From positions 186,001 through 250,000 of the IMG/VR virus record IMGVR_UViG_3300036760_000522: DNA of 64,000 bases; one strand, given 5' to 3'. The notes below the pieces were generated by a model. It was not told where the DNA came from. It made no database searches and saw only the letters and a program-made list of their open reading frames with translations. This document shows, piece by piece, positions 8,125 to 36,510 of this stretch. A program made the translations under genes and the position numbers. Within the stretch, counting starts at the first letter, position 1, and each line of letters opens with the position of its first letter.

Positions 8125-8436
8125 GTGACCGTCCGTCGAATTGTCTCTCGCTACAAAGAAGGGATCATCCCGGCTTCTTACTTCAAGTCGGGCACAATAG
8201 TTCTCTACGGCAAGTACAAAAATCACCGCGGGAGAGTTGCGGGCTTTGGTCAAGACAAGTGGGGAAATCCGACGATTGAAATCGAACCCATTCCCAAAGG
8301 GCGCAAGCAAAACAAGGTCATCGGGCTCTACAGGATCTGGCGGGCGGATGTAAAAGAAAAAGCTCTGGCCGCTGTTCGCAAGACCGTAGCTCAACGCATT
8401 GTTGAACGACACCGCCAAGCAAATGGGACGTCCTAG
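8125..8436 (+). CDS. Small basic protein with KOW/SH3-like core; candidate internal virion protein
   Basis: GTIVLYGKYKNHRGRV core; N-terminal RRIVSRYKEG and C-terminal QRIVERHRQA leader-like motifs. Confidence 0.7.
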   Translation: MTVRRIVSRYKEGIIPASYFKSGTIVLYGKYKNHRGRVAGFGQDKWGNPTIEIEPIPKGRKQNKVIGLYRIWRADVKEKALAAVRKTVAQRIVERHRQANGTS

Positions 8437-17483: not shown

Positions 17484-18127
17484 CGAGGCAAGTAGTTCAC
17501 AAGCGCAGCCGAGAACGCTACCGTGCCCCCAGAGCCTCTTACCAGGACAGTGTCCTGTGGACCTTCCTCGTAACTCAAAACTGTCTGGGGAGCCACCTGA
17601 CGTTCTGGACCGCCTCTTTGGACAGCCACGTACAAGTTGGTACCGCCTGAAGCTGCCTCGTTCTTGAGGTAGAGATCACGGGTACGGAACAGCCAAAGCT
17701 CGAGTGAGCCGGCCACAGTCGCAGCGTTTGGTGCTGTACCCGCGATTTGCACTCGAGCGTGCCCATAGCGTTCCGCATCTGTCAAAACGATAGTCGGAGG
17801 GCCTGCCGTGCCGGCAACCCCGACATAATCCACAGGGACAAATCTCAGCCAAAAGTGTTGCGTATCGGAGATCCCTGCTAACGCAGCAAACGACGTAGGA
17901 TCGAAAGCGATCCGAATCTCATCGCGCGAATTGCTAATCGCCTGCAAGACGGCTGAATTGAGATTTGGGTCCAAATACCCTGAGGAGATGTCTGCGGTCA
18001 AAATCGGCGTGAAAGCGGCATCGAAATTAGTAGCCGCTTCCAAACGGTACCCTTTGACGCCGGACCGCTTTGGTGTCAACAAGTCGACGAGGTGTGGCCG
18101 ACGGCGAAAGATCGAAAAGTCCCTCAT
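17480..18127 (-). CDS. Hypothetical (probably structural) protein
   Basis: 215-aa beta-rich ORF; ATGA overlap with the upstream gene. Confidence 0.75.
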   Translation of the reverse strand: MRDFSIFRRRPHLVDLLTPKRSGVKGYRLEAATNFDAAFTPILTADISSGYLDPNLNSAVLQAISNSRDEIRIAFDPTSFAALAGISDTQHFWLRFVPVDYVGVAGTAGPPTIVLTDAERYGHARVQIAGTAPNAATVAGSLELWLFRTRDLYLKNEAASGGTNLYVAVQRGGPERQVAPQTVLSYEEGPQDTVLVRGSGGTVAFSAALVNYLPR

Positions 18128-18525
18128 GAGGTCGCTTCCTTTGCAACAAGTGCGTCATAAGTAGAAGCGGCTTCGTTACCTTTTGTTGCCCGAACTTGCT
18201 CTCGAGCATCGGCCCAAGTTGCAGCTTCAGCCCCTGCTAGGTTGGGTACTAGACGTGGCTTTTCCACGTGGTCTCTCTCACGCTTAGCGAGAACGTTTCG
18301 ATGCTGGGCTCGATATTTGTTCTCCTTGCCAGCCTTCGACATCCAGCCACCGGAGACGCCATCTTTCAATACAGTGCGGAAGGACGCCGTCAGCACCAAC
18401 TTGAGCGGACGGTTTTCATCGTCGAGTATTTGTTTAGCACCAGACTTGACAGAGTCGAACTCTTCGAACGAGAGTCGACGAGACACCTGAACCCCGTTCT
18501 GATCTTGAAATGTGTAAACAGGCAT
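18124..18525 (-). CDS. FmdB-like (MPxY) protein lacking the zinc-ribbon cysteines
   Basis: Starts MPVYTFQD; later VLKDGVSGGW. Confidence 0.65.
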   Translation of the reverse strand: MPVYTFQDQNGVQVSRRLSFEEFDSVKSGAKQILDDENRPLKLVLTASFRTVLKDGVSGGWMSKAGKENKYRAQHRNVLAKRERDHVEKPRLVPNLAGAEAATWADAREQVRATKGNEAASTYDALVAKEATS

Positions 18526-19326
18526 TTATTTTTCCCGACGCGGGACAACCCACTGTCTGGTAGTAGCTAACACCGCGGCTACATGCTTACAGACACGATT
18601 GTCACGCTCAGGGTCTCGTATGTTGGGTGGAGAGGCGGTTCCACGAGCCTTGCCGAGCTGAAAAGTTTCTTGCCGAGCGTGAAACTCTGGACCCAGCCAC
18701 TGCCATGCAGGACAAGAGCACGAAAGCTCGAGGTCAAGTTTCGTGAAATGTACTGCCGATCCCCGACGAACGGCTCGAACCTTTACGGCTTTGGCTCCGT
18801 TGCCACAATTCACACTAAAGATCCAACGCAGGTTTCTGGGATCAAATCGCTTCAAGGCAGCGGAACATCCAAGTGATCGCTCTTGGAACTTCGTATCCAA
18901 ACCTTCCAAGATCTGCTCCAGAGTTGCAGATGTCCGAATGCTTGAATCCCCGGACAACAACAGTGTCGGGGCTCCTTCCAAGCGCCAAAGCTCGACAACA
19001 AATGTCGCAGCCTTGTAGGTGTTGTCGGTATCGTCGCGATACGGATACTGTGTTTTTGTCGGAGGGTTTGGCGTGCCGAGACCAAAGTAGCTCGTCTCAC
19101 CACCGACGTCCCGAACATCTACACGTGAATGCTCCTTGGTCTTATCCGTAGGGTTCGTGATCCGCCAAATGGGCTCATCACGATTAGGCCGACGACGAGT
19201 GTCGTCAACGGGCTTCGCATGTGTCGACTGACCAGGAATGTCAGCGGGTAACGCGAGTCCACGACCAGGCGGATCTCCTGTAGGAGTCTCCGAAACCGCA
19301 CGCTGTGTTGTGAGGGCCTGTGACAC
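18526..19326 (-). CDS. SWIM zinc-finger protein
   Basis: CSCPAW...VCKHVAAVL. Confidence 0.8.
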   Translation of the reverse strand: MSQALTTQRAVSETPTGDPPGRGLALPADIPGQSTHAKPVDDTRRRPNRDEPIWRITNPTDKTKEHSRVDVRDVGGETSYFGLGTPNPPTKTQYPYRDDTDNTYKAATFVVELWRLEGAPTLLLSGDSSIRTSATLEQILEGLDTKFQERSLGCSAALKRFDPRNLRWIFSVNCGNGAKAVKVRAVRRGSAVHFTKLDLELSCSCPAWQWLGPEFHARQETFQLGKARGTASPPNIRDPERDNRVCKHVAAVLATTRQWVVPRREK

Positions 19327-19329
19327 AAC

Positions 19330-19437
19330 TTACTTCAACTTGAGTGCCCAAGACTCCAAACTATGCATGACCTTCTTGAACTCCGCAAGTGTGCGCACAG
19401 GGACAAGTGCGGACCGTCGATCGTAGCTGTAGGACAT
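19330..19437 (-). CDS. 35-aa peptide with MSYSYDRR leader
   Basis: Below the ORF-track cutoff: MSYSYDRRSALVPVRTLAEFKKVMHSLESWALKLK; AGGAG upstream; fills the gap exactly. Confidence 0.65.
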   Translation of the reverse strand: MSYSYDRRSALVPVRTLAEFKKVMHSLESWALKLK

Positions 19438-19450
19438 GATCTGACGACTC

Positions 19451-19756
19451 CTACCGACCGAACGATCGAACGATCCACTTTGATTTGAAGTCCCTCTCGA
19501 GACGCTCTATATACCGAAAAGCTTCTCCAATCGTGTGGTCAAGTTCGTACAAGTCTTTTTCGACCTTCTCGATTTCTGGATTGTCGTAGTTATCTGTGTA
19601 CACTACGCCGCTAGCGTCTCGACGCACGTCACCCAAAGCCAGGTGCAGGTGGCGAACCATAACACGAGCATCCAAAAGCTTGTCCACGGACTGCTTCAGG
19701 TAACCGAGAAGCTTGTCTGGAGATACTGACGCCCGTCGATCGTAACTGTAAGGCAT
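19451..19756 (-). CDS. Helical small protein with MPYSYDRRA leader; candidate internal virion protein
   Basis: 101-aa ORF whose 5' end is nearly identical to that of 19330..19437. Confidence 0.75.
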   Translation of the reverse strand: MPYSYDRRASVSPDKLLGYLKQSVDKLLDARVMVRHLHLALGDVRRDASGVVYTDNYDNPEIEKVEKDLYELDHTIGEAFRYIERLERDFKSKWIVRSFGR

Positions 19757-19762
19757 GATCTG

Positions 19763-21031
19763 TCAAACCTTCCAAGCGAGAGCGGCTTCCTTCTTCTTGA
19801 ACTGATTTGCTTCCCACTTCTTCTTGTCCTCTTCGGACATGTTTTCAGTGGGGTCTCCCGCCTCTTTCTTCTTGAACTGATTCGCCTCCCACTTCTTCTT
19901 GTCCTCTTCGGACATGTTCTCAGTGGGGTCCCCTGCTTCCTTTGTGAAGTTGTCCTTGTTCTTCTCGTGTTCAATCTTCCACTTCTTGGCGTCGGCTTCG
20001 GACATGTTCTCGGTCGGATCAGCCGGCTTGCCTTCTTCGAAGCGAGAGCGTTTGGCGTCGTCGTCTGAACTCGCCAAAACCGAGGGATCCAAGGAAAGTT
20101 CATTCTTGAGAAAACCGCCTAACCCAAGACGTGTTCTCATGATCTCACGTTTGAAGGCTTCCGACTTCTGTGTATCGATTGATCCGAGATGCACTAAAAC
20201 CGTTGCAATGCCGTCGACCACTTCGAGCAAATTGGTCAAAGACAACCGATAACGTTTCGCGTTAGCCTGGCGCATAGCCACCACAAGGCTCTTCCGCATG
20301 GTCTCAAACGCGATCGCTATTTGCGCGTCATCTACCGCAGCCAATTTGTTGACAACAGCATCCGGGACTGTGTGGCTCAAAACTGTAGCGAGTTCACGAG
20401 GGCTAGGACGTGAAGACCGATCTTCCAAAGAGCTTGCCAAATGCTCTAGCTGATCAGCAACCTGTCCGATGTCAGGCATCGTCGAGGCAACCACCGTAGG
20501 AGTTGTTATCACTCCTTCCGGATCCAAGCTCTCAACCAACGAGGCCACACGATCCAATGCCAATGCACCGCTCTCACGAGCTAGTTTTGCGATCTCACGG
20601 AGTTCGTCCGCGGCTTGTTTTGGCTTCATAGACACTCTATTTTCTTGCATCTGACGGTCCTCCGAACGACGCTGCACATAACGAATCCTCACGTCTTTGA
20701 GAACCCGTTCCAACTCTTCCACTTTCTCAGGCAAAAGCCCTTGCTTGATTTCCTCGTAGTCAAGACGATCTGCCGCGAGAGCTGTCGCCTCTAGAGCCTT
20801 TTGAAGCTTGAAGGCTGTCTCAGGGATGCTATTGACGAGATGGCCAGCGGTTTCGAAAATGTGATCCTTGTGTGAAGACTTGTTGATCAACACAGTTGTG
20901 TCCGCGATGTAGCGAACCAGTTGATCACAACGAAGACGCGCATCACCTAACTCCTCCATCAAATAGAGAAGAGCCCCCGCCTCCTTGGTCTGGTGCGCAG
21001 TCCGTTGCAAGCAACTGGTAAATTCATTCAC
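19763..21031 (-). CDS. Helical protein with C-terminal DPTENMSEED repeats; candidate head/internal protein
   Basis: 422-aa ORF with several KEA/RTA/KQA/KLA motifs. Confidence 0.8.
   Translation of the reverse strand: MNEFTSCLQRTAHQTKEAGALLYLMEELGDARLRCDQLVRYIADTTVLINKSSHKDHIFETAGHLVNSIPETAFKLQKALEATALAADRLDYEEIKQGLLPEKVEELERVLKDVRIRYVQRRSEDRQMQENRVSMKPKQAADELREIAKLARESGALALDRVASLVESLDPEGVITTPTVVASTMPDIGQVADQLEHLASSLEDRSSRPSPRELATVLSHTVPDAVVNKLAAVDDAQIAIAFETMRKSLVVAMRQANAKRYRLSLTNLLEVVDGIATVLVHLGSIDTQKSEAFKREIMRTRLGLGGFLKNELSLDPSVLASSDDDAKRSRFEEGKPADPTENMSEADAKKWKIEHEKNKDNFTKEAGDPTENMSEEDKKKWEANQFKKKEAGDPTENMSEEDKKKWEANQFKKKEAALAWKV
19785..20022 (-). repeat. 75-bp (25-aa) tandem repeat: two near-identical copies plus one diverged
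   Basis: KEAGDPTENMSEEDKKKWEANQFKK x2 and ADPTENMSEADAKKW. Confidence 0.9.
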
Positions 21032-21431
21032 CTGATGGATCCAATTTCTTCCGAAGAGCTTTCAAGTACGCTAGGGCGTTGGTATTCTCTTTGAGAGAAT
21101 ACAATGTGGTTTGACGAACAACCGTGACTCCTCGCTCTAGATCGTAGCGACCCAGTCCCCAGAGACGTGACATTGGGTCGTCACAAATCTTCAAGTCTCC
21201 CCCCTGCCTTGCGAAGTCGACAAGCTCGAGAGCAGAGACAACCTTTCGCTCAGGTATCAAAGGGCCGTTGCCGAACATAGGGAACTCCTCGAGAGCTTCC
21301 TTGTATCCAGGGTTTTGGACGATGATTCCGAACATGCCACGTTCATGATCATCCGCCCGATAAACGGTCAAACCATCCTTCTGGAGAGCTGAAATCCTCT
21401 CCAGAAGGAGCTCCTCCGTCATGGGCTTCAT
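21024..21431 (-). CDS. Hypothetical protein
   Basis: 135-aa ORF overlapping both neighbours. Confidence 0.7.
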   Translation of the reverse strand: MKPMTEELLLERISALQKDGLTVYRADDHERGMFGIIVQNPGYKEALEEFPMFGNGPLIPERKVVSALELVDFARQGGDLKICDDPMSRLWGLGRYDLERGVTVVRQTTLYSLKENTNALAYLKALRKKLDPSGE

Positions 21432-22351
21432 ACGAAAATCTCCGGGAACTCAGACATGATCGCGTCACGAGTCTCGACAGAGGTCTCAGCAGCCACAGCG
21501 GCTCGAAGCACATCCTGACGATCTCCATAGTCCGCCACCAAACGAGCGACCTTGCGCTTCACTGGCTGATCGAAGTCGTAGTTGTCTGGAAAGTCTGGAG
21601 TAATGGATCTTGCAACTTTCCTGCGTGTGTCAGTCGTGGCAACACGCGGAGTTAACGGTTTCATCGATCCAGGGCCATTCGTGTTTGTGATCCGCACGCC
21701 GTCCTGGACCACGACATCGTCCCCAGGACGTGCAGAAGTCTTGGGAGTACCGAGTGTCAAAGTAGACGAGATTCCTTCTTCACTAGCAATGCGCTTTGAA
21801 ACTGCGTCACGCCCAACGCTCATACTAGATTGAAAAAACGCAGCCTCATCTGTAGGCATACCAAGCAAAGCTTCGTCAACTGTCTGACCCTCTGCGGGGT
21901 CAATCTGAACATTGTTGAGCTGATTGTTGATCTCGGAAAGGCTTTCCAAACCTAGATTTGTCGAACTCTTCGCTGATGTGCGAAGCGTTCGAACGGTGTT
22001 CACATTGCCCGTCTCGATTGGGGCTTCTGTACTCGCCAGGTTCTTCTGCTGGACCGTTGGATCCATGACATTGCCGCCTTGAGCTGGACCGACTCTGATC
22101 CCAGCCCTCGGTGAAGCATGTCTCTTCGCAGTTGCAGGAGCGAGACTTGATGTTTCAGTTGCAACTCGACTCTTTAGCCAACCAGCTTTGATGGCCCCAC
22201 GAAGCTGAGGCAAAACGACCGGATCTTGGCCGTCGATCATCACTCGAGTCCCATCAAATAGGATGGTGGTGTCTTTTTCAACTGGAACGTTTAACCCTCC
22301 CAACAGGAAGCGTTGGGTGACTGTGTACTCGACGTATTGTTGTGTTCCCAT
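21428..22351 (-). CDS. Hypothetical protein (307 aa)
   Basis: Start reassigned to ATG 22351 (AAGGAG SD), which removes the overlap with the upstream gene. Confidence 0.75.
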   Translation of the reverse strand: MGTQQYVEYTVTQRFLLGGLNVPVEKDTTILFDGTRVMIDGQDPVVLPQLRGAIKAGWLKSRVATETSSLAPATAKRHASPRAGIRVGPAQGGNVMDPTVQQKNLASTEAPIETGNVNTVRTLRTSAKSSTNLGLESLSEINNQLNNVQIDPAEGQTVDEALLGMPTDEAAFFQSSMSVGRDAVSKRIASEEGISSTLTLGTPKTSARPGDDVVVQDGVRITNTNGPGSMKPLTPRVATTDTRRKVARSITPDFPDNYDFDQPVKRKVARLVADYGDRQDVLRAAVAAETSVETRDAIMSEFPEIFV

Positions 22352-22407
22352 TTTGGATCTCCTTCTATTTGTTTTTTTGGCGGATCGTTCAAGATCCGTA
22401 GAGTGTC

Positions 22408-23034
22408 TCAGTGCCCGTGTCCGAATGCCGTTTGGTACTTGGGCTTTCCGTCCCACTTGCTGGCAGAGTGTCCATCGATGGTGAATGACTGCCCCGACGG
22501 ACGGACTCGTTTGGTCGGACCCGTGAACTTGCCAGGAACGGCTACTACATAGTCAGTAGCCTCGTGCCCGCCTGTGGTTTTCTCTGCGATCTTTCGAACA
22601 AGGAGTACCTTGCCTCGAACCTCGACCACTTCATAGAAGTCGATGTTTGTCTGATCGTAGCCCCAACTCGTGTAGTAGATATCGCCAACGTCGGCATCGT
22701 GTTTGAACTCACGCCGCTCCTGTTGACGGTCCTCTTTCATCTTGAGCCGGGTTCTCTGGCCCGCAATTGTTTCTTCAATCTTCCGAGTCCGATCGGCCTC
22801 GCTGAGGAAACGGTAATTCCAGAGTGGCTTGTTGGCTTTGCCGGAGAAAGCGATCCCGTACGGCTTACTATTCGACTCCCAAGTCCAAATCGCGAGATCT
22901 GTACCCTCAGGGGTGATGGGATCCTTATCTCGTACCTCGGGCGGAAGATGAAACGACCGAGGTACGTGAAATCGACCCGGGAGGCCTGCCTCACGAAATC
23001 GGGCGACTACGTTCGAGATGATGACGGAATCCAC
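22408..23034 (-). CDS. SWGYDQTN-motif protein with an N-terminal VVARFREA leader
   Basis: VGDIYYTSWGYDQTNIDFYEVV; probable leaderless GTG start at 23034, 14 nt after the late-promoter motif. Confidence 0.75.
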   Translation of the reverse strand: MDSVIISNVVARFREAGLPGRFHVPRSFHLPPEVRDKDPITPEGTDLAIWTWESNSKPYGIAFSGKANKPLWNYRFLSEADRTRKIEETIAGQRTRLKMKEDRQQERREFKHDADVGDIYYTSWGYDQTNIDFYEVVEVRGKVLLVRKIAEKTTGGHEATDYVVAVPGKFTGPTKRVRPSGQSFTIDGHSASKWDGKPKYQTAFGHGH

Positions 23035-24171: not shown

Positions 24172-26070
24172 TCACACAAAAACAAAAACCTGCTCAGTAG
24201 CTGGCACCTTTCCTATTCTACCAAGAGGTAGAACCAAGGTGCGCTGCAAACGAAACCCTGCGAGACCTGCCAGTCGCACCAACTCGTCCGCAATCGGGAA
24301 CCGTTGTGCCCCTCGTCGCACATTCTTTGTGTTCACACAAAACAAACCACCGTCACGTAAGTGTCGTTTGGACTTCAACACGAACGGTTGAAGAAACCCT
24401 TCCAGCCAAAGATCCCACGTTGAATACCTGACCCAACTCTGCGCCGCACTATCAGAGTACTTCTCGACCGAAAAGTACGGAGGACTCGTTAGTACAAGAT
24501 CCGCGCGCAAGTCTGCCAGGTCCACGTCTTCGAACGGGTATTCAAAAAAGTCAAAATGGCCAACCACCGATTGCAAAGCTGTGTATGACGCACCAGCTTT
24601 AGGATGAGGATCAACGCCAACGTATCGTCTACCGCTTGCCAGAGTCCCTACAGCACGACCACCATAACCAGCACACGGATCCAAGACGGTACCGCCAACA
24701 GGGCACAACGCCTCCACCAGAGCCTTTGCAAAACAAGGGCGAAAATTGGTCGGGCCACGAACAACGGCCTGCAAAGCGCGAAACACACGTACAGGCTGCA
24801 CAGGATCACCAACAGCCAATTGAAACTTCACGGCCCTACGCACATATTCCTGGTCGTACCACGCCGATCGCACTGAAGGACGATCTTGATATCTAGCGTC
24901 ATATCTGTGTGGAAAGAACCGCTGACACAGCTTCGATCCTGAACGTGTTTCACGCACCAATCTATCTTCCACTAGTTCAGTTTTGGACAACAACAGCTTA
25001 GACCAATCTATCTCCGCCTCCTCCATCGACGGCACAACCAAAGGCAGCACAGTTCTCGAAAGAACAGCGACGACGCTCTCTACATACGTTAGTGTGCGAG
25101 CGTCCAGCCTCTTGATCGCAAGACTCGCAGTTTCAACGTCCAACTCGACTTTGCTGCTACGTGAAGGACGACCTGTACATCCAGGGGCTAAACCGTGTTG
25201 TTTCCTCCAACGCGAAACACTTGTGCGGGACACTTGAAGTACATCAGCGATGTCGTCGGTATGGAGGCCCCGATCAAATAACGATCGCAAACGATCGTAG
25301 GTCAACAGATCTCGAGGCGCTAAACCAGCCTTGGGCGTCTTGACAGCGATCTTGTAACCGAGGCTAGGATGTAGATGTGGACGCACCAAATCCAAAAACC
25401 TGTTCAGCGCTGTGCGCCCTTGAATGTGGAGGGATCCGTCCTCGTAGACTTTGCTTCTGATACCCAGACTTGTCAGAATTCCAACCTGCACGCGTTGATC
25501 CTCTAGTGAGGGACCAACAGTGATCCTTACGTAATTACCTGAACGCGATCCATCATCCATGAACCAGACAGCCAGAGCTAAGCCGTCTACCCACTCTACT
25601 GGCAAGCGTGTAAACGTTTTGGGCCCTGAACCTGACGGGTAGAACAACTGCCAATAAGGAAAGAGGGCTCGACACGCATGTGTGAACAATCGATGACCCA
25701 GATACTCCCCTTTATCTGCTTTCCGAATGGCTACTGTAAACACCCCCCACTCCTCAGCTTTCCACAACAAATACTCATGTTGTTTGACGGAGTGGTGTTC
25801 TTGGTATCGTGCTGTATTTGTACCAGAACGCCGTAAGTTACCGTCACCTAACATTGATCCAACTAGAATTGACCTCAGACGATCGGTCAAAGTATCTGGG
25901 AGCCCAAAGCGATCACTCTTAGTCAGTGTCGGAATGCCGTACTTCTGGCGAAGACGACTAACGTGTGCTTGGGAAATACCAAACACACGACCAATTTCGG
26001 TCTCTGTCTTGTGCTGATCAAGATAAAGGTCCCGCAGAAATTGTTCCGTCAATCGTGTCGACACCTTCAC
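24172..26070 (-). CDS. HTH + double-motif LAGLIDADG endonuclease + HTH + amino-DNA methyltransferase fusion
   Basis: LVGSMLGDG and LAVWFMDDG (LAGLIDADG_2); IADVLQVSRTSVSRW (HTH); VLDPCAGYGGR and LTSPPY (MTase). Confidence 0.85.
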   Translation of the reverse strand: MKVSTRLTEQFLRDLYLDQHKTETEIGRVFGISQAHVSRLRQKYGIPTLTKSDRFGLPDTLTDRLRSILVGSMLGDGNLRRSGTNTARYQEHHSVKQHEYLLWKAEEWGVFTVAIRKADKGEYLGHRLFTHACRALFPYWQLFYPSGSGPKTFTRLPVEWVDGLALAVWFMDDGSRSGNYVRITVGPSLEDQRVQVGILTSLGIRSKVYEDGSLHIQGRTALNRFLDLVRPHLHPSLGYKIAVKTPKAGLAPRDLLTYDRLRSLFDRGLHTDDIADVLQVSRTSVSRWRKQHGLAPGCTGRPSRSSKVELDVETASLAIKRLDARTLTYVESVVAVLSRTVLPLVVPSMEEAEIDWSKLLLSKTELVEDRLVRETRSGSKLCQRFFPHRYDARYQDRPSVRSAWYDQEYVRRAVKFQLAVGDPVQPVRVFRALQAVVRGPTNFRPCFAKALVEALCPVGGTVLDPCAGYGGRAVGTLASGRRYVGVDPHPKAGASYTALQSVVGHFDFFEYPFEDVDLADLRADLVLTSPPYFSVEKYSDSAAQSWVRYSTWDLWLEGFLQPFVLKSKRHLRDGGLFCVNTKNVRRGAQRFPIADELVRLAGLAGFRLQRTLVLPLGRIGKVPATEQVFVFV

Positions 26071-26289: not shown

Positions 26290-27174
26290 TCAAACTCTGG
26301 TCACGACCAGGCGGCTGACAGCACGTGGGTTGAACGCGCCGATGCCGATATTTTCAAAGACCGAAAATCCGATCAGACGGTTCTTGGGATCGTCGGCGCT
26401 CAAAACCGTGAGTTCTGTACGAACCGGGAACCGGCCAAAGTTCTCGGCTTCCGCGCAGATGTAGATGAACCCAACCGGTACGATTCTGCTCGTGATGATC
26501 TGCGCTCCCCACAACACAGCTTGTAGGCCTGTGTTGAGAAGGACGGCCTGGCTTTCGATATCCAGGATGTCCCGACCGAACTTGCGGATGTCCGCATAGT
26601 CGGTCGCGTTCATGAAGATCCGGGCGACCCGAAGCCCGTGACGCTCGACCTCTGCGAATGCGTCGGCCAAGAACGACGGTGAGACCGGTGCGACCACAGC
26701 CAAGTCAGGGTTGGTCTGACCGGGTAGTGTGTCGAAGCCGCTGACAGCAACGCTGTCAACGATTGCGAAACCGCGCTCGTCTTCAGCTGCTGCAATCTGC
26801 GCTTTCGCCAGGTCCTGAGCACGCTCGATCATGTCGAACCTGCGCTCCTTGATCTGGGAGAGCGGGATCTCAGGATTCGAAGCAATCTCGAAGACCGGGA
26901 AGATCACACGACGTGACTTCTGGATCGACTGGATGTTGGCGCCTTCTTCACCGACGACGAACGCCGTGACTTCAGGATCCTTGTCGTAAACAGGCAAGGC
27001 GCCGTCAGGCAGCTCTTCCACGAGGAAGCTCTTCCGGATGACTGCCACGTAGTCGCGTCGTAGACGCAACGATTGAATCATCGAAGCCGCAAGCTTCTCA
27101 CGCCCTTGCGGTGTTCTGATGTGTTCGCCGATTAGGCGCTGTCGGATCTCGTTACTGATTATGGAAGCTGACAT
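26290..27174 (-). CDS. Major capsid protein (HK97 fold)
   Basis: GREKLAASM...RRDY...ELPDGALPVYD, IFMNATDYADIRKFG, LWGAQII, IGAFNPRAV; follows protease, scaffold and decoration genes; strong terminator. Confidence 0.88.
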   Translation of the reverse strand: MSASIISNEIRQRLIGEHIRTPQGREKLAASMIQSLRLRRDYVAVIRKSFLVEELPDGALPVYDKDPEVTAFVVGEEGANIQSIQKSRRVIFPVFEIASNPEIPLSQIKERRFDMIERAQDLAKAQIAAAEDERGFAIVDSVAVSGFDTLPGQTNPDLAVVAPVSPSFLADAFAEVERHGLRVARIFMNATDYADIRKFGRDILDIESQAVLLNTGLQAVLWGAQIITSRIVPVGFIYICAEAENFGRFPVRTELTVLSADDPKNRLIGFSVFENIGIGAFNPRAVSRLVVTRV

Positions 27175-27901: not shown

Positions 27902-29071
27902 CTAACGAAAAGCGTGACTCACGTCGGGTGGGGCGTCCCACAGACCTGCGAGGTTGTCAGATCCCGTCGCCGGGAGGTCTGATCCTGGAGTGCCGCCTAT
28001 ACGGCTCACACCCGGAGGTTTTGTTCCAAGTGTGCGACTTGCGGTCTTGACCCTGGTACCCGGATCATCAGCACTGGCAGTGATGCCAAAAGCTGCTTGA
28101 GCATTCTGGGCTTCAGGTGCTGAAGCGAAGATCTGTTGCAGATCAGGGTCCACTGCCACGTCATCGACCATCATCGACGGGCCCATGTCCTGAAAGAAGC
28201 CCATGTCATCATTGGCCATCTGCGGCTGTTGTTGAACGGGTTGCTGCTGCTGCTGAGCTTGCTGCTGCGGAGGCTGTTGTTGCAGCTGCTGCACAGCTTG
28301 TTGCACCATATCTTGGAGCTGAGCTTCTAGCTGCTGCTGTGACTGTACCTGCTGTTGCTGGACTTGTTGCTGAGCCAATTGCTGCACCATCTGGTTAGCA
28401 GTGACTGTGTCCCCCTGCTGCATGGCTGCGATCGCTTTTGCAGCAAGCTTCGCACGAGCTTCCTTCTGCTGTTCCTTATCATCATCTTGCTGCTGATCCT
28501 GAGCTTGCTTGCTCTTGTCTTTGTCAGCGTCGTCTTGCTGCTGCTGATCCTGAGCTTGCTTGCTCTTGTCTTTGTCAGCGTCGTCTTGCTGCTGCTGCTG
28601 CTGATCCTGAGCTTGCTTGCTCTTGTCTTTGTCAGCGTCGTCTTGCTGCTCGTCATCAGAGGCGAGACGTCGAACGGTATCGATCAAAACGCTATCGGGT
28701 AGGTGCATGAACCCGAGGGCCTGATCCTCCAAGAGTTGTGTCGAAGCGTTCTTGAGGAGATGCTTGGAAAGCTGGAGGCAGACCTCAGCTTTCTTCTCGA
28801 GCTTCTCGTCGTCTTCTTGCTCTTCGGCGGCGGTCTTGAAAGTGTCAGGCCTGAACGCAGGCATCCCGATCTCGTTTACACGAGTGTAGCCAGTAGAGTC
28901 GTACTCGTCCTTCCACCGACTCGGTGATACATCTTCTGCAAAGTCTGAAGGCGTACCGGTCACGTATGCGTCGGCAGCGGGTTGGGCCTGCAAATTCTCA
29001 GGCCGCATCGAATCAGGATCAGCCGCCAACTTGGCAATTCTCTCGCGGTCCCATGTAGATCGTTCACGCAT
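27902..29071 (-). CDS. Scaffolding/core protein with polyQ and acidic repeats
   Basis: Position between protease and capsid genes; low complexity; many (K/R)xA motifs. Confidence 0.75.
   Translation of the reverse strand: MRERSTWDRERIAKLAADPDSMRPENLQAQPAADAYVTGTPSDFAEDVSPSRWKDEYDSTGYTRVNEIGMPAFRPDTFKTAAEEQEDDEKLEKKAEVCLQLSKHLLKNASTQLLEDQALGFMHLPDSVLIDTVRRLASDDEQQDDADKDKSKQAQDQQQQQQDDADKDKSKQAQDQQQQDDADKDKSKQAQDQQQDDDKEQQKEARAKLAAKAIAAMQQGDTVTANQMVQQLAQQQVQQQQVQSQQQLEAQLQDMVQQAVQQLQQQPPQQQAQQQQQPVQQQPQMANDDMGFFQDMGPSMMVDDVAVDPDLQQIFASAPEAQNAQAAFGITASADDPGTRVKTASRTLGTKPPGVSRIGGTPGSDLPATGSDNLAGLWDAPPDVSHAFR
28485..28650 (-). repeat. Three tandem copies of DDADKDKSKQAQD(Q)n with n = 6, 4, 3
   Basis: Near-identical DNA units differing in CAG number. 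Confidence 0.92.
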
Positions 29072-29147: not shown

Positions 29148-30566
29148 TCACGTAGTTCCTAGGTCAAAGAGCTGACCTTTCTCGATCAAAGCTTTTTGCT
29201 CCGCCGCTGTGAGCACATGACCCAAAACCCTCTGACAAACCGCTAAAAATGCGGTATTTCCGCCATGTCGACGTGGACCTCCCACCTCAAGAACGGTTCG
29301 GTAAACCCGATCAGTCCCCGCCTGCTTGATTCGACCCATTTGGTCCAAAACCCTAGATATTACAAGTACTTCCGCTCCTGACAAAGATTTGTTGTTCGCA
29401 ACACGACGCCAACCACCAAGTCGATGCAAGACAAAACCTGTCAAGATTCGTTGCACACAGTCCGGATTCCGTATTCGAGCAGACAAGTAGCGCTCGACTG
29501 ATCTGAACTCGGGGATCTTAGAAGCTTCGTGTGTGAGGCCTCCATTCGTGTCATCTCGCAGAGTTGAACGAGGTGGAACAGGCCCGTTCAAGTCACTTCG
29601 AACCTTCTCCAAAGCCTTCTGCCGAATCAATTTAGCGACCTCATCAACAGCGGTATCAATATCGCTCGGGGAGCCAGAAGGCGTCACCTCGTTTGACGGA
29701 TCAACGAAGGGGTTCTGATCTTGTGCTGCTTTAAGCGAAGCACCAAGAGTCGCCGTTGGTGGACGTAAAGGCAAAACTTGGTTGAGCTGTGATGCGGCAG
29801 CTTCGCCTGGAAAAAGGTTACGAACAACTGCACCCTTGAATGCCGGATTCGCAACCCAAGATGCCTCGATGAATTTTACGCTGTCATTTTCTGAGGCGTT
29901 GCCACACAACTCTGCCACTTTGTGTGTCTTCCCAAAAGCGTCTTTGAACGTGTTTCCCTTCGCGTATTTTATGTGGCTGCAAAGCTCTGTGTCGTCAGTG
30001 GCCACGTTTCCGCAGAACGAACACTGGCTGTAGAGAATTGAACAACCCATGCTGAGAGAATTGATCTTCCCTGACTCGATCCCAGCAATCAAAGCTCGGT
30101 GCTTCCGATCAGTCGCCACCAAAATGTCAATGTAGACACTCGGGCCCGTGTCCCGGGCCACAGCGTCAATGATCCGTCCCTTGGAGAGCTCCTTGACCTG
30201 TAGGTGCTCCATGAAATTGTTGGCACCAATGAACGTACGATACGTTGCCAACAACAACGGACGGGACCACGCGTCGTTGTTGTTATTTATAAAACGAGAC
30301 GTCTCCGACGTGATGTAGTAATCAAGGAAACGCCGGTTGACTTCAAAGCTGCCTTGTAAGTGACGACCCAGTGGACCTGGACCATTTTCGGTATCCACTG
30401 ACGCCATGATCGTGGCGTGACTCAACAAGTACTGTGCCGGATCGTATTTCTGTAACACAGTGCTCTGTGTAGCAACCTTGCGCCCAGCGGTGACATGACG
30501 CTGCCAAGCATCAACTGAAGCCAAAGGCTCCGCGACTACTGCGTTGGCGTACTTAAGAAAGGCCAT
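29148..30566 (-). CDS. Prohead (maturation) protease with zinc-finger insertion
   Basis: NNNDAW, FMEH...SKGRIIDA, SLSMGC...CSFCG...CSH, FIEASWVANPAF. Confidence 0.8.
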   Translation of the reverse strand: MAFLKYANAVVAEPLASVDAWQRHVTAGRKVATQSTVLQKYDPAQYLLSHATIMASVDTENGPGPLGRHLQGSFEVNRRFLDYYITSETSRFINNNNDAWSRPLLLATYRTFIGANNFMEHLQVKELSKGRIIDAVARDTGPSVYIDILVATDRKHRALIAGIESGKINSLSMGCSILYSQCSFCGNVATDDTELCSHIKYAKGNTFKDAFGKTHKVAELCGNASENDSVKFIEASWVANPAFKGAVVRNLFPGEAAASQLNQVLPLRPPTATLGASLKAAQDQNPFVDPSNEVTPSGSPSDIDTAVDEVAKLIRQKALEKVRSDLNGPVPPRSTLRDDTNGGLTHEASKIPEFRSVERYLSARIRNPDCVQRILTGFVLHRLGGWRRVANNKSLSGAEVLVISRVLDQMGRIKQAGTDRVYRTVLEVGGPRRHGGNTAFLAVCQRVLGHVLTAAEQKALIEKGQLFDLGTT

Positions 30567-30752: not shown

Positions 30753-31013
30753 TCAGCCTTCCAGCAATTTGATTGTCGAACGAAGTGTTTGACCGTGGCC
30801 GCTTACCAACAGCGTTTCGCAGAGATACCGAGCCGCAACGTGCCCCTTGAAGCTGTCGAGAAAGGTCTTCAAACGTTGCTTGTCATCAGTCTTGAGGATC
30901 TGTTGCAAGTCATTGAGAACCTCTGGACGGATACTGCCTGCGGTTACACACTCCTGATAGGCGTGTGCCGCTTGTAACAAGGCTTGTTTGTTCGTCATCA
31001 CACCAATCACCAC
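30753..31013 (-). CDS. Hypothetical protein
   Basis: Fills the gap; start uncertain. Confidence 0.6.
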   Translation of the reverse strand: MVIGVMTNKQALLQAAHAYQECVTAGSIRPEVLNDLQQILKTDDKQRLKTFLDSFKGHVAARYLCETLLVSGHGQTLRSTIKLLEG

Positions 31014-31669
31014 CCAACAGGGGCGCCTTCCGGTCCCAAAATATCAGCTTGTCGAATCAAGTAGAGGTCTCGGGGACAAGCGAACAGTTTGACCTTCTGT
31101 CCTTTGCTCATCTTGTACGTGGTACGTCGCATGCTCGTCCCACACCTCGGACAATTCGGGCGGCCAATCTCAACTTCCGAACGTGTTGCACGATGTTGTC
31201 GATTCTGTGAAAACCAATACGTGGCTTGCTTGTCAGCAAGACCGGACCAGTAGAGGGACTCCGCAAGAGCCGCAAATCTGTAGAACTTCGCAGTTTCCTG
31301 TCGTATGGTTCTGTCCCCAATTTCAGACCCGTACCGCCTCCATTGATCATCGTAAGAGGCAACTTCAGACAGACCTGCATGAAACGATCTGGCCAGCTCG
31401 CGGTAGAACTCCGGGTTCTCGACCAACCACCAAACTGCGGCTGACTTCGTGCCGAACCCATTCACCGAAGACGGAAGACACACCGCGAACGTGATTCCTA
31501 CCTTAGCTAGAGACTCCTCCGTCGACTGTTGGTCGAATGGCCACGCAACCTTGATGTTAGGAGAGACCTCTACGATTCGCCCAACGTAGGGCGACAAACC
31601 GTGCGACCCGAACTTCTGAACCAAGTCACCGGGGCCGAACGAGCGATCGTAGTCCCAGTAGTTGGACAT
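31007..31669 (-). CDS. Hypothetical head-module protein with C-terminal zinc ribbon
   Basis: CPRCG...ACPRD. Confidence 0.75.
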   Translation of the reverse strand: MSNYWDYDRSFGPGDLVQKFGSHGLSPYVGRIVEVSPNIKVAWPFDQQSTEESLAKVGITFAVCLPSSVNGFGTKSAAVWWLVENPEFYRELARSFHAGLSEVASYDDQWRRYGSEIGDRTIRQETAKFYRFAALAESLYWSGLADKQATYWFSQNRQHRATRSEVEIGRPNCPRCGTSMRRTTYKMSKGQKVKLFACPRDLYLIRQADILGPEGAPVGW

Positions 31670-32641: not shown

Positions 32642-33727
32642 CTACGCAGAGCGTGGCGCCAGCTGTTCGTGCAGGTATCCCGCGGGACCTTGCTGCCTCA
32701 GGTTCGTCGGATCAGGCACAAGACCCCACTTAGGCGGGTACCACTGAGGTATCGGAAATGGCTTAGGGCGGTAGCGCTTCTTGATCCTGACGCGCTTGAG
32801 CATCCCTTTGAAAGCGGAATGTGAAGCCCGGGAGTACTTACCGATCTCGCAGAACAAGTTCTGACAATCGATCAGTTTCAGGGGACGTCCCCACAAGCCC
32901 TTCCAGAGTAGTCCTCGAGAGTGGAACTCCTCTTCGGCTCTATCACAGACAACCTTGATGACGTCTGCTTCCGACAAGTCGCCGATATCCGTGAAGCACT
33001 TCCGGATCCCGTCTTTGGCACCAAGACCTGCAACGACGTAGTCGTTCTCCGAAAAATTACAGATCGGGCTATAGTTGATATCGACTGCCAACTGAAAAGC
33101 GAGGAACGGACCAAACGACGGGATCGCATGAATCCTGTGGTAAAGGGTCTCGTACGTGTCAGCCGTGTACACAAGCATCGGCAGCTCACCCAACATCGAC
33201 TGCTCCAACAGGCGTAAATGTGCGTGGTGCTTGCTCCTCAAGTTGTCAATGTTTGGACACGGGAGTACGTAAGCGCTGTTGTAGATGGCCTCTCCATAGA
33301 CCTTCAACAGGTCCAGCGACCTTGCGTACAATGCGTATGAGAAGGTTTTCCACGTCAACTCGCCATGTTGTGAAGTCAACCATTCCCAAGTCTCGATCTT
33401 GTTGAACATACGAAAAAGCATGATCCGGAAAAGGATTTCCTCAGGCGATTGGATCCCTTCGTAGATCACGTGGCGAACCAGGTACTGGCTCACACGATCC
33501 GACACCCGGTACACATTCGTGAAACGGTACCCGTTGAGAATCGGATTCGTAGTCCACGGAGGATCCTCTCCGTGGAATCGACGATAGAAAACGTCCTGAC
33601 GAGCGTACGCGAAAGACCAATACAGGTCGTAAATGTCTGTTACAACGAGATGTCGGTTACCAGAGATACGTATGGCCCTCTTGGCCATCGACTTCGGCGC
33701 TAAGATCTTACCCAACTTACCTGTCAC
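32642..33727 (-). CDS. aGPT-PPase1 / 5-hmdU DNA kinase helical-domain family protein (thymidine hypermodification)
   Basis: YWSFAYARQDVF...PPWTTNPIL...RFTNVYRVSDRVSQYL, LFRMFNKIETW, GPFLAFQLAVD, DCQNLFCEIGKY. Confidence 0.8.
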   Translation of the reverse strand: MTGKLGKILAPKSMAKRAIRISGNRHLVVTDIYDLYWSFAYARQDVFYRRFHGEDPPWTTNPILNGYRFTNVYRVSDRVSQYLVRHVIYEGIQSPEEILFRIMLFRMFNKIETWEWLTSQHGELTWKTFSYALYARSLDLLKVYGEAIYNSAYVLPCPNIDNLRSKHHAHLRLLEQSMLGELPMLVYTADTYETLYHRIHAIPSFGPFLAFQLAVDINYSPICNFSENDYVVAGLGAKDGIRKCFTDIGDLSEADVIKVVCDRAEEEFHSRGLLWKGLWGRPLKLIDCQNLFCEIGKYSRASHSAFKGMLKRVRIKKRYRPKPFPIPQWYPPKWGLVPDPTNLRQQGPAGYLHEQLAPRSA

Positions 33728-35986: not shown

Positions 35987-36505
35987 CTAGATAGACACCT
36001 GTATCCCGAGAAACTCACTGTTCACAGATTTTGGCAATTGTGCAACATGTCCAACCACCGCTGCCGGGGCAAATAAGCTGCCTGACAGTGTCAATTCGTC
36101 TTCAGGTGTCCAGAAACCACGACTTGAAAAATACAAGAGTTGGTTGACTGTGTAGATCAACAGAACCAACGGACCGCCACCAATGCGTGAGGCGTAGGTG
36201 TAGCGCTCGTAAGTAGACGTAGAAATAAGACACCCACCAAAAAGCATGGTTGCGTATCGATAGACAAGCTGTTGGCGAGTCGTCGAAGCAAAGTCGTCCC
36301 CTGGTTCATCTGATCCCCAGATCAAAAACCCACAAGCTCGCCCGTCAGAATAGTCCACCGTCCGATCATCAATCGGCACATCGGCCCAACGAATCCCTTG
36401 GCCCCCAGGCCATCCTCCAACAACCATGGTTGGCTGAATGGTAACGGTCGTCGAGTCTTCCTTGTAGAAGACGACACAATCCCGTGTACGAAGCGTGTCC
36501 AACAT
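35987..36505 (-). CDS. Decoration-protein paralog 3 (172 aa)
   Basis: Start reassigned to ATG 36505 (MLDTLRTRDCVVF) to match the paralogs. Confidence 0.8.
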   Translation of the reverse strand: MLDTLRTRDCVVFYKEDSTTVTIQPTMVVGGWPGGQGIRWADVPIDDRTVDYSDGRACGFLIWGSDEPGDDFASTTRQQLVYRYATMLFGGCLISTSTYERYTYASRIGGGPLVLLIYTVNQLLYFSSRGFWTPEDELTLSGSLFAPAAVVGHVAQLPKSVNSEFLGIQVSI

Positions 36506-36510
36506 GAAGA

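What the first reader, a model, noticed from the sequence alone, without database searches (positions are those of the whole stretch)
19330..19762. Adjacent unrelated genes share a 30-bp 5' module encoding M(P/S)YSYDRR: a cassette array with a second leader type
Seen: 19414..19443 and 19733..19762 are 27/30 identical, covering 6 nt of leader plus the first 8 codons. The proteins then diverge completely (MPYSYDRRA-SVSP, 101 aa; MSYSYDRRSA-LVPV, 35 aa, not in the ORF track). Both leaders end in an RxA site. Weaker echoes occur at MSNYWDYDRS (31669) and KEASYRYDWTA (42026 gene). Inference: a second capsid-targeting peptide whose DNA also serves as a recombination handle for gaining, losing or swapping cargo cassettes, as at the variable T4 internal-protein loci.
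Basis: partly seen in the sequence, partly recalled or inferred. Interest (0 to 1): 0.74.

Follow-up and report, generated by a model that had tools for sequence, protein, structure and literature searches.

The report
N-terminal address tag in huge phages
The shared 30-bp gene start encodes a short N-terminal peptide (M-x-Y-x-Y-D-R-R) that a whole clade of 300-435 kb environmental phages puts on dozens of otherwise unrelated small proteins; it looks like a protein address label, perhaps for loading cargo into the capsid, but where it sends proteins is not shown.

Summary
In detail: 19414-19443 and 19733-19762 are 27/30 identical and start two adjacent minus-strand genes, E (101 aa) and F (35 aa). 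It is not a local oddity. In the 301.5-kb phage genome, Y-x-Y-D-R-R occurs six times in six-frame translation (0.07 expected). Every copy lies 1-4 residues after an ATG, at four loci. The same tag heads 2-12 genes in each of at least nine related huge-phage contigs. Codons vary synonymously, so the peptide is what is selected. The cargos (35-507 aa) are unrelated to one another and mostly ORFans. Orthologous cargos carry either this tag or a second leader (R-V-A-A-R-Y/F), so leaders are modular. The E/F site is a variable slot in a conserved head-module operon, holding 0, 1 or 2 cassettes in different relatives. At another locus an indel is bounded exactly by two leader modules, which supports a recombination handle there; the F indel is not bounded this way. 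Capsid targeting is the best analogy (T4 capsid targeting sequence, encapsulin loading peptides) but is untested, and no T4-type cleavage site follows the tag. The two "weaker echoes" are not members. The tag is real and I found no description of it in the literature searched; its destination is unknown.

The parts
19451..19756 (-). Cassette E: 101-aa protein. It has the tag M-P-Y-S-Y-D-R-R, an A/S-rich linker and a two-helix hairpin cargo.
   Evidence: ORF. An 84%-identical orthologue in G001/L003/L004 keeps the tag with 3 synonymous changes. AF2 model: residues 1-12 are unstructured, helices at 13-45 and 60-99, pLDDT 78.
19733..19762 (-). The 30-bp 5' module of E (6 nt of leader, CAGATC, plus 8 codons).
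19330..19437 (-). Cassette F: 35-aa ORF. It has the tag M-S-Y-S-Y-D-R-R followed by a short amphipathic helix-like tail. It may be a truncated cassette.
   Evidence: ORF, with AGGAG 8-10 nt upstream of the ATG. It is absent from the close relatives, and no homologue of its tail was found anywhere.
19414..19443 (-). The 30-bp 5' module of F.
   Evidence: 27/30 identical to the E module.
19340..19458 (-). 119-nt segment present here but missing in relatives G001 and L004. It carries F's ribosome-binding site, tag and 32 codons. The junctions share only a 2-nt (GT) microhomology.
   Evidence: Alignment A1.
19763..21031 (-). Conserved backbone gene upstream of the slot (422 aa; conserved N-terminal domain, repeat-bearing C-terminus). 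E's ATG lies 6 nt after its stop codon.
18526..19326 (-). Conserved backbone gene downstream of the slot (SWIM zinc-finger protein, 266 aa). In G002, G003 and G005 it directly follows the homologue of the 422-aa gene.
   Evidence: Pfam SWIM hit; synteny.
8125..8436 (+). A gene in the window that carries the other leader type (T1, R-[VI]-[AV]-x-R-[YFW]). It begins M-T-V-R-R-I-V-S-R-Y; its G005 orthologue begins ...A-V-R-V-A-A-R-W.
29148..30566 (-). Head maturation protease, a candidate processing enzyme if the tag is a propeptide.
   Evidence: phrog_18299, E = 7e-13.
27902..29071 (-). Q/D/K-rich low-complexity protein between the protease and the capsid gene; probably the scaffold and a candidate receptor.
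   Evidence: Translation; position in the head module.
26290..27174 (-). HK97-fold major capsid protein, the most conserved protein of the clade (80-81% identity across tag-bearing genomes) and a candidate receptor.
   Evidence: Pfam Phage_capsid.
31007..31669 (-). Not a member. The N-terminus MSNYWDYDRS only resembles the tag by chance.
   Evidence: Orthologues begin M-I-D-Y-W-K-L-V-K, and the G001 orthologue reads Y-W-D-Y-A-R-S.

Best explanation
SHOWN:
- The 30-bp module encodes a short peptide tag at the extreme N-terminus: Met, 0-3 residues, then Y-x-Y-D-R-R. An Ala/Ser/Thr(/Pro)-rich linker follows, and AF2 models the tag as disordered.
- The tag is conserved across a clade of huge environmental phages whose typical shared proteins are only 25-50% identical.
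- It sits on many unrelated, fast-turning-over cargo proteins of 35-507 aa. Most are ORFans; several are zincin-like HExxH metallopeptidases.
- On orthologous cargo it is interchangeable with a second leader, T1 (R-V-A-A-R-Y/F), which also heads a topoisomerase-IB/GNAT gene.
- E and F are two such cassettes inserted in a slot between two conserved genes of the head-module operon. Cassette number at this slot differs between relatives.

INFERRED:
- The tag is a docking or address peptide read by a conserved receptor.
- The most plausible destination is the assembling prohead, by binding the scaffold core or the inner face of the HK97-fold shell. Tagged cargos would then be packaged and delivered with the DNA. 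This would work like the T4 capsid targeting sequence or an encapsulin cargo-loading peptide.
- The E and F modules also share a DNA-level copy. Such modules can serve as short direct repeats for gain or loss of cassettes; this is seen at one T1 locus.

CONFIDENCE: about 0.9 that this is a selected, modular N-terminal peptide leader; about 0.4 that its destination is the capsid.
For: Reality and specificity of the tag:
- G000 has 6/6 strict hits at N-termini against 0.07 expected.
- IMG/VR pattern scans hit almost only huge-phage contigs.
- Per-genome counts are G003 12, G002 6, G006-G008 3 each, G009, G005 and G001 2 each. Reversed-pattern controls are 0 everywhere.
- Nearly all hits lie 0-3 codons after an ATG.

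Peptide-level selection:
- Every constrained codon varies synonymously (TAC/TAT, GAC/GAT, CGN and AGR), with no replacement of Y, Y, D or the first R in 40 instances found by a pattern that fixes them.
- The E orthologue has 3 synonymous and 0 non-synonymous changes in the tag.

Cargo:
- The cargos of the six G000 tagged genes have no homologue in G002, G003, G005 or W01.
- There are no Pfam or PHROG families apart from one SprT-like hit.
- HExxH is present in 5 of the larger cargos. The model of one such family has pLDDT 85 and weak zincin/M34-like matches.

Modularity:
- In the HExxH-422 family, about 11-12 of 30 homologues carry this tag or a near variant of it, and about 8-9 carry the second leader, at the same position before a conserved block.
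- The HExxH-236 and 110-aa families show the same exchange.
- Combined or duplicated tags occur.

Consistent with late or virion use:
- E and F are co-oriented and tightly spaced inside the head module. The capsid gene, protease and scaffold-like gene lie upstream and a 'head protein' gene downstream.
- No terminator, significant RNA structure or Rfam family lies between them.
- The capsid protein is by far the most conserved protein in the clade.

Cassette dynamics.

Disordered tags.
Against: - There is no direct evidence of virion location. No cultured relative carries the tag: Tunturi_5 and LR745208.1 have 0 strict hits, and the Tunturi paper reports no virion proteomics.
- No conserved protease site follows the tag. 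[LI]-x-E and [AGS]-x-E are at background frequency.
- Some tagged genes sit outside structural modules. C and D follow a topoisomerase gene, and B lies inside a tRNA array.
- A few occurrences are internal or C-terminal (G003 L023 and L038; internal S-Y-D-R-R in two G000 proteins). This fits a general binding motif as well as it fits an N-terminal signal.
- The prediction of capsid protein with E gave no answer.
Confidence: 0.4

Rival explanations
1. The tag is a short linear docking motif for a hub that is not the virion. Candidates are a phage or host protease/unfoldase adaptor (a degron that times cargo turnover), a chaperone, or a replication or transcription factory. Tagged proteins are recruited or destroyed together.
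For: - The tag is a disordered, terminal peptide followed by a flexible linker.
- It is sometimes duplicated in one N-terminus, as avidity motifs are.
- Internal and C-terminal occurrences exist.
- Tagged genes also lie outside structural modules.
- Cargos include enzymes that act on DNA or proteins, namely a T1-tagged topoisomerase IB and zincins.
- No cleavage site follows the tag.
Against: - No candidate hub was identified.
- E, F and A sit inside late-looking structural operons.
- A degron on dozens of accessory proteins, conserved more strictly than almost any protein of the clade, has no precedent I know of.
Confidence: 0.3
2. The tag is a self-association element. An alternating-aromatic beta-strand with an Asp/Arg salt-bridge pair would let all tagged proteins co-assemble with one another into a common body or condensate, inside or outside the head, without a dedicated receptor.
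For: - The Y-x-Y pattern, the D-R-R charges and strict invariance of these five residues fit such an element.
- Tandem duplication of the motif occurs in single proteins.
- Many different cargos per genome carry it.
Against: - AF2 gives the tag no structure.
- The chemically different, helix-prone T1 leader substitutes for it on orthologous cargo. That is hard to reconcile with homotypic zippering.
Confidence: 0.1
3. The similarity is only a local duplication remnant. F is an unexpressed leftover of a partial duplication of E's start, and the motif has no function of its own.
For: - F is only 35 aa and is absent from the closest relatives.
- Its tail has no homologue.
- E and F share the non-coding CAGATC, so a DNA copy event did occur.
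- A tag-only remnant exists elsewhere: in G003 L038 an ORF stops right after the tag.
Against: - The motif is not unique to these two genes. There are four further N-terminal copies in this genome and dozens across the clade, with synonymous variation.
- F keeps an intact ribosome-binding site and tag, and tight operon spacing.
- This rival can hold for F as a gene (about even odds that it is a remnant) but not for the tag.
Confidence: 0.03
4. The element acts as nucleic acid, not as peptide. It would be a translation-initiation or regulatory RNA site, or purely a recombination site, that happens to lie in codons 1-8.
For: - It always overlaps the start codon.
- Many tagged genes in G002 and G003 lack an obvious Shine-Dalgarno sequence.
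- Leader modules bound an indel at one T1 locus.
Against: - Third codon positions and the Arg codon family (CGN versus AGR) vary freely while the amino acids are invariant.
- Upstream sequences are unrelated between loci.
- There is no significant RNA structure (z = -0.62) and no Rfam family.
- The distance from the ATG varies by 0-3 codons.
Confidence: 0.03

Closest known systems
T4 capsid targeting sequence (CTS) on internal proteins IPI-III and Alt
   Same: A short N-terminal peptide is the only thing shared by a diverse, fast-evolving set of small proteins (PMC3012670; PMC7411985). The loci are variable between relatives. A prohead protease and a scaffold-like protein are encoded nearby.
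   Different: There is no sequence resemblance. No [LI]-x-E-type cleavage site ends the tag. The tag is only 6-8 residues and stricter than the CTS. At least two interchangeable leader types exist. Tagged genes are scattered, some of them outside structural modules. Virion location is unproven.
Encapsulin cargo-loading peptides (from my own knowledge of the field)
   Same: A short terminal peptide with a flexible Ala/Pro/Ser-rich linker on unrelated cargos, sometimes repeated. The receptor would be the inner face of an HK97-fold shell protein, and here the capsid protein is the most conserved protein.
   Different: Here the tag is N-terminal, belongs to a tailed phage and has a different motif. 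Binding to the capsid protein was not supported or refuted.
N-terminal propeptides of giant-phage ejection proteins (SPN3US, phiKZ-like)
   Same: They are proposed to target proteins into the prohead in giant phages (PMC7411985).
   Different: Those propeptides are 100-130 residues long, belong to paralogous families and end at A-x-E sites. Here there is a 6-8-residue tag, non-homologous cargos and no such site.
Phage P1 Dar antirestriction proteins and MuF-anchored 'polyvalent' proteins (from my own knowledge; Iyer et al. 2017, not re-read here)
   Same: Enzymatic or anti-defence cargos are packaged in heads. Zincin-like metallopeptidase modules are typical, and weak fold matches of one tagged cargo include large 'minor capsid'/PolyVal proteins.
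   Different: There is no MuF fusion and no large multidomain protein. Here the cargos are free-standing and carry a peptide tag.
Conserved N-terminal trafficking modules of polymorphic effectors, and RiPP leader peptides
   Same: The logic is the same: a conserved leader joined to a hypervariable cargo, often in tandem arrays.
   Different: No secretion system or modifying-enzyme cluster is linked to the tagged genes. Cargos reach 507 aa and are folded domains.

Membership tests
T4-type capsid targeting sequence (CTS) proteins | A short N-terminal peptide shared by otherwise unrelated proteins of one phage. | tested here: met
   Six genes in G000 and 2-12 in relatives; the cargos are unrelated.
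T4-type capsid targeting sequence (CTS) proteins | The leader ends at a prohead-protease site ([LI]-x-E in T4, A-x-E in SPN3US) and is removed. | tested here: not met
   [LI]xE occurs in 14% of tagged proteins against 19% background, and [AGS]xE in 26% against 23%, within 22 aa after the tag. Only a tendency to R-x-A is seen (60% against 12%). Cleavage itself cannot be tested, and a protease of different specificity is not excluded.
T4-type capsid targeting sequence (CTS) proteins | Tagged proteins are found inside proheads or virions and are ejected. | not testable with these tools
   All tag-bearing genomes are metagenomic. There is no proteomics for relatives.
T4-type capsid targeting sequence (CTS) proteins | A prohead protease and a scaffolding core are encoded. 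| tested here: met
   Protease at 29148-30566 (phrog_18299) and a Q/D/K-rich scaffold-like protein at 27902-29071.
T4-type capsid targeting sequence (CTS) proteins | Loci are hyperplastic between close relatives, with cassette gain, loss or swap. | tested here: met
   The E/F slot holds 0, 1 or 2 cassettes. C+D are replaced by a T1-led HExxH gene in G001. A T1 tandem pair in G001 corresponds to a single gene in G000, with breakpoints in the leader.
Encapsulin-type cargo-loading peptide | A terminal peptide with a flexible linker on diverse cargos. | tested here: met
   Logo and linker composition; the tag is disordered in AF2 models.
Encapsulin-type cargo-loading peptide | The peptide binds the inner surface of the HK97-fold shell protein. 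| tested here: inconclusive
   Complex prediction of capsid protein with E: 'no answer', score 0.00. This is not evidence either way.
Tat/Sec signal peptide | A twin-arginine motif or basic n-region followed by a hydrophobic h-region and an A-x-A site. | tested here: not met
   After R-R comes a polar A/S/T/P-rich linker and no hydrophobic stretch. A-x-A occurs in 9% against 14% background. The cargos are modelled as soluble helical or zincin domains.
Paralogous protein family (the tag as the conserved end of one fold) | Detectable homology beyond the motif. | tested here: not met
   All-against-all BLAST of cargos finds only orthologue pairs. Lengths run from 35 to 507 aa and the predicted folds differ.

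The most novel reading that the evidence does not exclude
Huge phages of this clade use a small 'sorting code' of interchangeable N-terminal address peptides: Y-x-Y-D-R-R, R-V-A-A-R-Y/F, and probably lineage-specific ones such as N-P-R-K-A-F-E and T-L-R-S-K-L-I-R-L-A-H. One or a few highly conserved receptors read the code and load a large, rapidly exchanged arsenal into the capsid for co-injection, or into a so far unknown intracellular compartment. The arsenal would include ORFan effectors, zincin proteases and a topoisomerase IB. The leader-coding DNA doubles as the crossover point that shuffles cassettes.
Probability: 0.3. Interest if true: 0.85.

Novelty: new variant of a known kind. Interest (0 to 1): 0.75.

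Why it matters
If the tag is an address label, it gives a sequence-only way to list the delivered or co-localised accessory proteins of uncultured 300-435 kb phages, most of which are ORFans. It also points to a conserved receptor that can be looked for, and supplies a 6-8-residue handle for loading foreign proteins. In addition, it shows that leaders and cargos recombine as modules in huge phages, which would explain how their accessory gene sets turn over while the head genes stay fixed. I found no description of this motif in the literature searched.

Tried and rejected
- **Reads from other runs.** Read laying of four sediment runs on 17500-22500 gave only thin, fragmented contigs, and none bridges the F indel. 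Uninformative.
- **Complex prediction.** Complex prediction of the capsid protein with E returned 'no answer'.
- **Family searches.** Pfam and PHROGs on E, F, A-D, their neighbours and ten larger tagged proteins found nothing except one SprT-like hit.
- **Cultured phages.** blastn and tblastn of the locus and of E against GenBank phages found no match. The HExxH-422 cargo hits only the uncultured LR745208.1.
- **ESM Atlas.** The search with the 487-aa tagged protein gave only weak zincin/LPD leads.
- **Receptor by phylogenetic profile.** Fifty G000 genes are present in tag-bearing G002, G003 and G005 but not detected in the tag-less LR745208.1. That is too many, and the result is confounded by divergence.
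- **Shared promoter.** A T-rich box seen upstream of some tagged genes is not specific to them.
- **RNA element.** Rejected.
- **Sigma-70-like hit over E's start.** It is made of the stop and leader sequence and I take it as coincidence.
- **The 'echoes'.** MSNYWDYDRS (31669) is rejected by its orthologues. KEASYRYDWTA is at neither end of the 42026-43003 ORF nor at the start of the 40758-42044 gene, and it lacks D-R-R.
- **'MNIET'.** This N-terminus occurs in 3-4 G000 genes but is absent from relatives, so it was left as a note.
- **Literature.** A search for the motif found nothing relevant.

Full report
**Setting.** The window is bases 186001-250000 of a single 301,550-bp virus record, here called G000. 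It encodes an HK97-fold capsid protein (26290-27174), a head maturation protease (29148-30566), a 5-hmdU DNA kinase and replication genes. Its capsid protein is 72% identical to that of the uncultured 485-kb phage LR745208.1 (here W01), 47% to the Acidobacteria jumbo phage Tunturi_5 and 37% to Bacillus phage G. Almost all genes in the window are on the minus strand.

**Observation.**
- On the minus strand, both 19762-19733 and 19443-19414 read CAGATC-ATG followed by seven codons: M-P-Y-S-Y-D-R-R and M-S-Y-S-Y-D-R-R. They are 27/30 identical, and the similarity ends at codon 8.
- The genes are E (19451-19756, 101 aa) and F (19330-19437, 35 aa).
- E starts 6 nt after the stop of a 422-aa gene. 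F starts 13 nt after E's stop and has an AGGAG upstream. F's stop lies 3 nt before the GTG of a SWIM zinc-finger gene.
- Nothing suggests an RNA element: folding gives z = -0.62, Rfam finds no family, and there is no minus-strand terminator between the genes.

**The motif is a genome-wide N-terminal tag.**
- Six-frame translation of the whole genome contains Y-x-Y-D-R-R exactly six times, against 0.07 expected from composition. Seven permuted versions occur 0 times.
- All six copies lie 1-4 residues after an ATG that opens an ORF, where only 4% of six-frame positions lie.
- Besides E and F, the tagged genes are A (genome 56937, 58 aa, inside a tail-fibre-like operon), B (119255, 103 aa, antisense inside a tRNA array) and the adjacent pair C and D (130008 and 129671, 109 and 137 aa, directly after a topoisomerase-IB/GNAT gene).
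- Beyond the tag the six proteins are unrelated, and none has a Pfam or PHROG family.

**The tag is clade-wide.**
- Scanning IMG/VR for three codon-degenerate versions of M-(x)-Y-S-Y-D-R-R returned almost only very large contigs, 73-435 kb.
- Counting the general pattern in whole records gave the following. G003 (417 kb): 12. G002 (407 kb): 6. G006 and G007 (398 and 435 kb, both complete with terminal repeats): 3 each. G008: 3. G009, G005 and the close relative G001: 2 each. The reversed-pattern control was 0 in every record.
- Nearly every hit is 0-3 codons after an ATG, on ORFs of 35-507 aa.
- These genomes share 80-81% capsid identity with G000, but typical shared proteins are only 25-50% identical and just 61 genes are common to all.
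- LR745208.1 and Tunturi_5 have no strict copy.
- The logo from 43 non-redundant proteins is Met, 0-3 residues, Y, [S>T,N,D,F..], Y, D, R, R, followed by A/S/T-rich positions +1 to +4 and frequent Pro at +5 to +7. The invariant positions are partly fixed by how I searched.

**Selection acts on the peptide.**
- In 40 instances every constrained codon varies at its third base (TAC 32/TAT 8; GAC 24/GAT 16), and Arg switches between CGN and AGR.
- The E orthologue in G001 has three synonymous and no non-synonymous changes in the six motif codons.
- Upstream leaders are unrelated between loci.
- Among 780 pairs of tags, 6/6 identity of the six bases before the ATG occurs only between orthologues and between E and F. 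So E and F additionally share a DNA-level copy (duplication or gene conversion). The high identity inside the codons is largely expected, because F's tag is also 16/16 identical to unlinked C.

**Leaders are modular.**
- The cargos of A-F have no homologue in G002, G003, G005 or W01.
- Some cargo families are wider, however, and these carry alternative leaders. The 422-aa HExxH protein of G002 has 30 metagenomic homologues that all share a conserved block (..L-R-K-D-F-L-T-L..).
- Before that block, about 11-12 of them carry Y-x-Y-D-R-R or a near variant (one carries it twice). About 8-9 carry a different leader, T1, of the form M-D-P-x-x-x-R-[VI]-A-x-R-[YF]. A few have neither.
- W01 and G001 carry T1-like versions of this family. 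A 236-aa HExxH family and a 110-aa family show the same exchange.
- T1 is itself enriched at N-termini across the clade. In G000 it heads the topoisomerase-IB/GNAT gene and the window gene 8125-8436.
- Tags can be combined, as in Y-S-Y-D-R-R-S-R-V-A-A-R.
- AF2 models show both tagged proteins I modelled with an unstructured tag. E has residues 1-12 disordered and then a two-helix hairpin (pLDDT 78). The HExxH-422 protein has residues 1-8 disordered and then a well-modelled domain (pLDDT 85), with weak matches to gluzincin/M34-like peptidases and to phage 'putative peptidases'.

**Cassette dynamics.**
- In G002, G003 and G005 the homologue of the 422-aa gene is followed directly by the SWIM gene. 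G001 and an independent Logan contig (L004) have E only. G000 has E and F. W01 has an unrelated 188-aa gene there. So this is a variable slot in a conserved head-module operon.
- F sits on a 119-nt segment (19340-19458) whose junctions share only GT. That indel is not bounded by the leader modules, and recombination between the modules could not produce the E-only state.
- C and D are replaced in G001, from 8 nt before C's ATG to D's stop, by a T1-like-led 405-aa HExxH gene of the family above.
- An A-like tagged gene and a T1 gene sit among tRNA genes in G001 but elsewhere in G000.
- At genome 122649, G000 has one T1 gene where G001 has two in tandem. The two G001 copies share an identical 26-nt start. 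G000 equals the upstream flank of copy 1, plus the module, plus the cargo of copy 2. That is the signature of crossover within the leader DNA. The 'recombination handle' idea is therefore supported at one locus and not at the two others I could examine.

**Mechanism.**
- What is shown is a selected, disordered, extreme-N-terminal peptide with a linker, on many unrelated cargos, interchangeable with a second leader. That is the anatomy of an address or docking signal.
- I favour loading into the prohead (about 0.4), for four reasons. The closest precedents are capsid loaders: the T4 capsid targeting sequence (PMC3012670, PMC7411985) and, from my own knowledge, encapsulin loading peptides. E, F and A lie in structural operons next to the protease, scaffold-like and capsid genes. 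The capsid protein is the only protein conserved nearly as well as the tag. Enzymes such as zincins and a topoisomerase are plausible co-injected cargo.
- Against this: there is no virion data, no T4- or SPN3US-type cleavage site, some tagged genes lie outside structural modules, and a few occurrences are internal or C-terminal.
- The main rival is a docking motif for a non-virion hub, such as a degron, a chaperone or a replication factory (about 0.3). A self-association tag is possible (about 0.1). A nucleic-acid element and a meaningless duplication are essentially excluded for the motif, although F itself may be a truncated remnant (about even odds).

**Comparison and novelty.** In logic this resembles the T4 capsid targeting sequence. 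It fails the one sequence-testable defining feature, a protease site at the end of the leader, and shares no sequence with it. I therefore file it as 'works like', not as a member. I found no mention of the motif in the literature searched. I rate it a new variant of a known kind, of high interest because it is clade-wide, strictly conserved and directly testable.

Noticed in passing
window 19791-19930: A 75-bp tandem repeat (1.9 copies, 95% identical) lies in the 3' end of the 422-aa gene and encodes repeated ..D-P-T-E-N-M-S-E-E-D-K-K-K-W-E-A-N-Q-F-K-K-K-E-A-G.. units. Orthologues are called at 395-aa (JGI call on L003/G001) and 419 aa, so copy number or start choice may vary.
   Followed up: partly
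window 24172-26070: An ORF that hits LAGLIDADG homing endonuclease, HTH and N6/N4 DNA methylase domains sits directly after the capsid gene. The close relative G001 has SNase and UDG genes there instead, and LR745208.1 has a 1229-aa version. This looks like a mobile insertion hotspot beside the capsid gene.
   Followed up: no
G003 (for example 134322-134902 and 142482-148332), LR745208.1 (for example 351543-352536) and G003 385259-387552: There are further lineage-specific N-terminal leader families on small unrelated proteins. M-(S)-N-P-R-K-A-F-E occurs about 10 times and M-D-x-L-R-W-K-T 4 times in G003. M-T-L-R-S-K-L-I-R-L-A-H-x-N-P-x-L-R-x-Q-L-L-P-L-L-K-E-A occurs 6 times in LR745208.1. None has a Pfam match.
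   Followed up: partly
window 37809-39794; genome 58847, 72632 and 281240: Three or four G000 genes begin M-(x)-N-I-E-T, out of 5 NIET in all six frames; the motif is absent from relatives. The 661-aa gene in the window (37809-39794) also has an internal S-Y-D-R-R at residue 116, and a 321-aa gene next to cassette A has an internal S-Y-D-R-R-K-T.
   Followed up: partly
window 35987-37550: Three tandem paralogues of 172-173 aa all begin ..F/L-R-T-R-D-C-V... They are conserved in G001, G002 and W01, and a copy occupies the E/F slot in LR745208.1.
   Followed up: no
G002, G003 and G005 intergenic regions: The heptamer CGGTGTA (GGTGTA in 69, 40 and 21 upstream regions; 9-15-fold enriched) is a candidate clade-specific promoter element. 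It is not enriched in G000.
   Followed up: no
window 32642-33727: A 5-hmdU DNA kinase (Pfam E = 6e-96) implies hypermodified thymidine in this phage's DNA.
   Followed up: no
genome 119255-119566 (L009 6256-6567): Tagged gene B lies antisense between tRNA-Arg and tRNA-Met inside a tRNA array. G001 has about 21 tRNA genes in the corresponding 19 kb, with extra tagged cassettes inserted between them.
   Followed up: partly
genome 130010-131458 (L008 6011-7465): A type IB topoisomerase domain is fused to a GNAT acetyltransferase domain, and the protein is headed by the T1 leader. One metagenomic homologue of the HExxH-422 family carries the Pfam topoisomerase I domain PF01028 on the same protein.
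   Followed up: no
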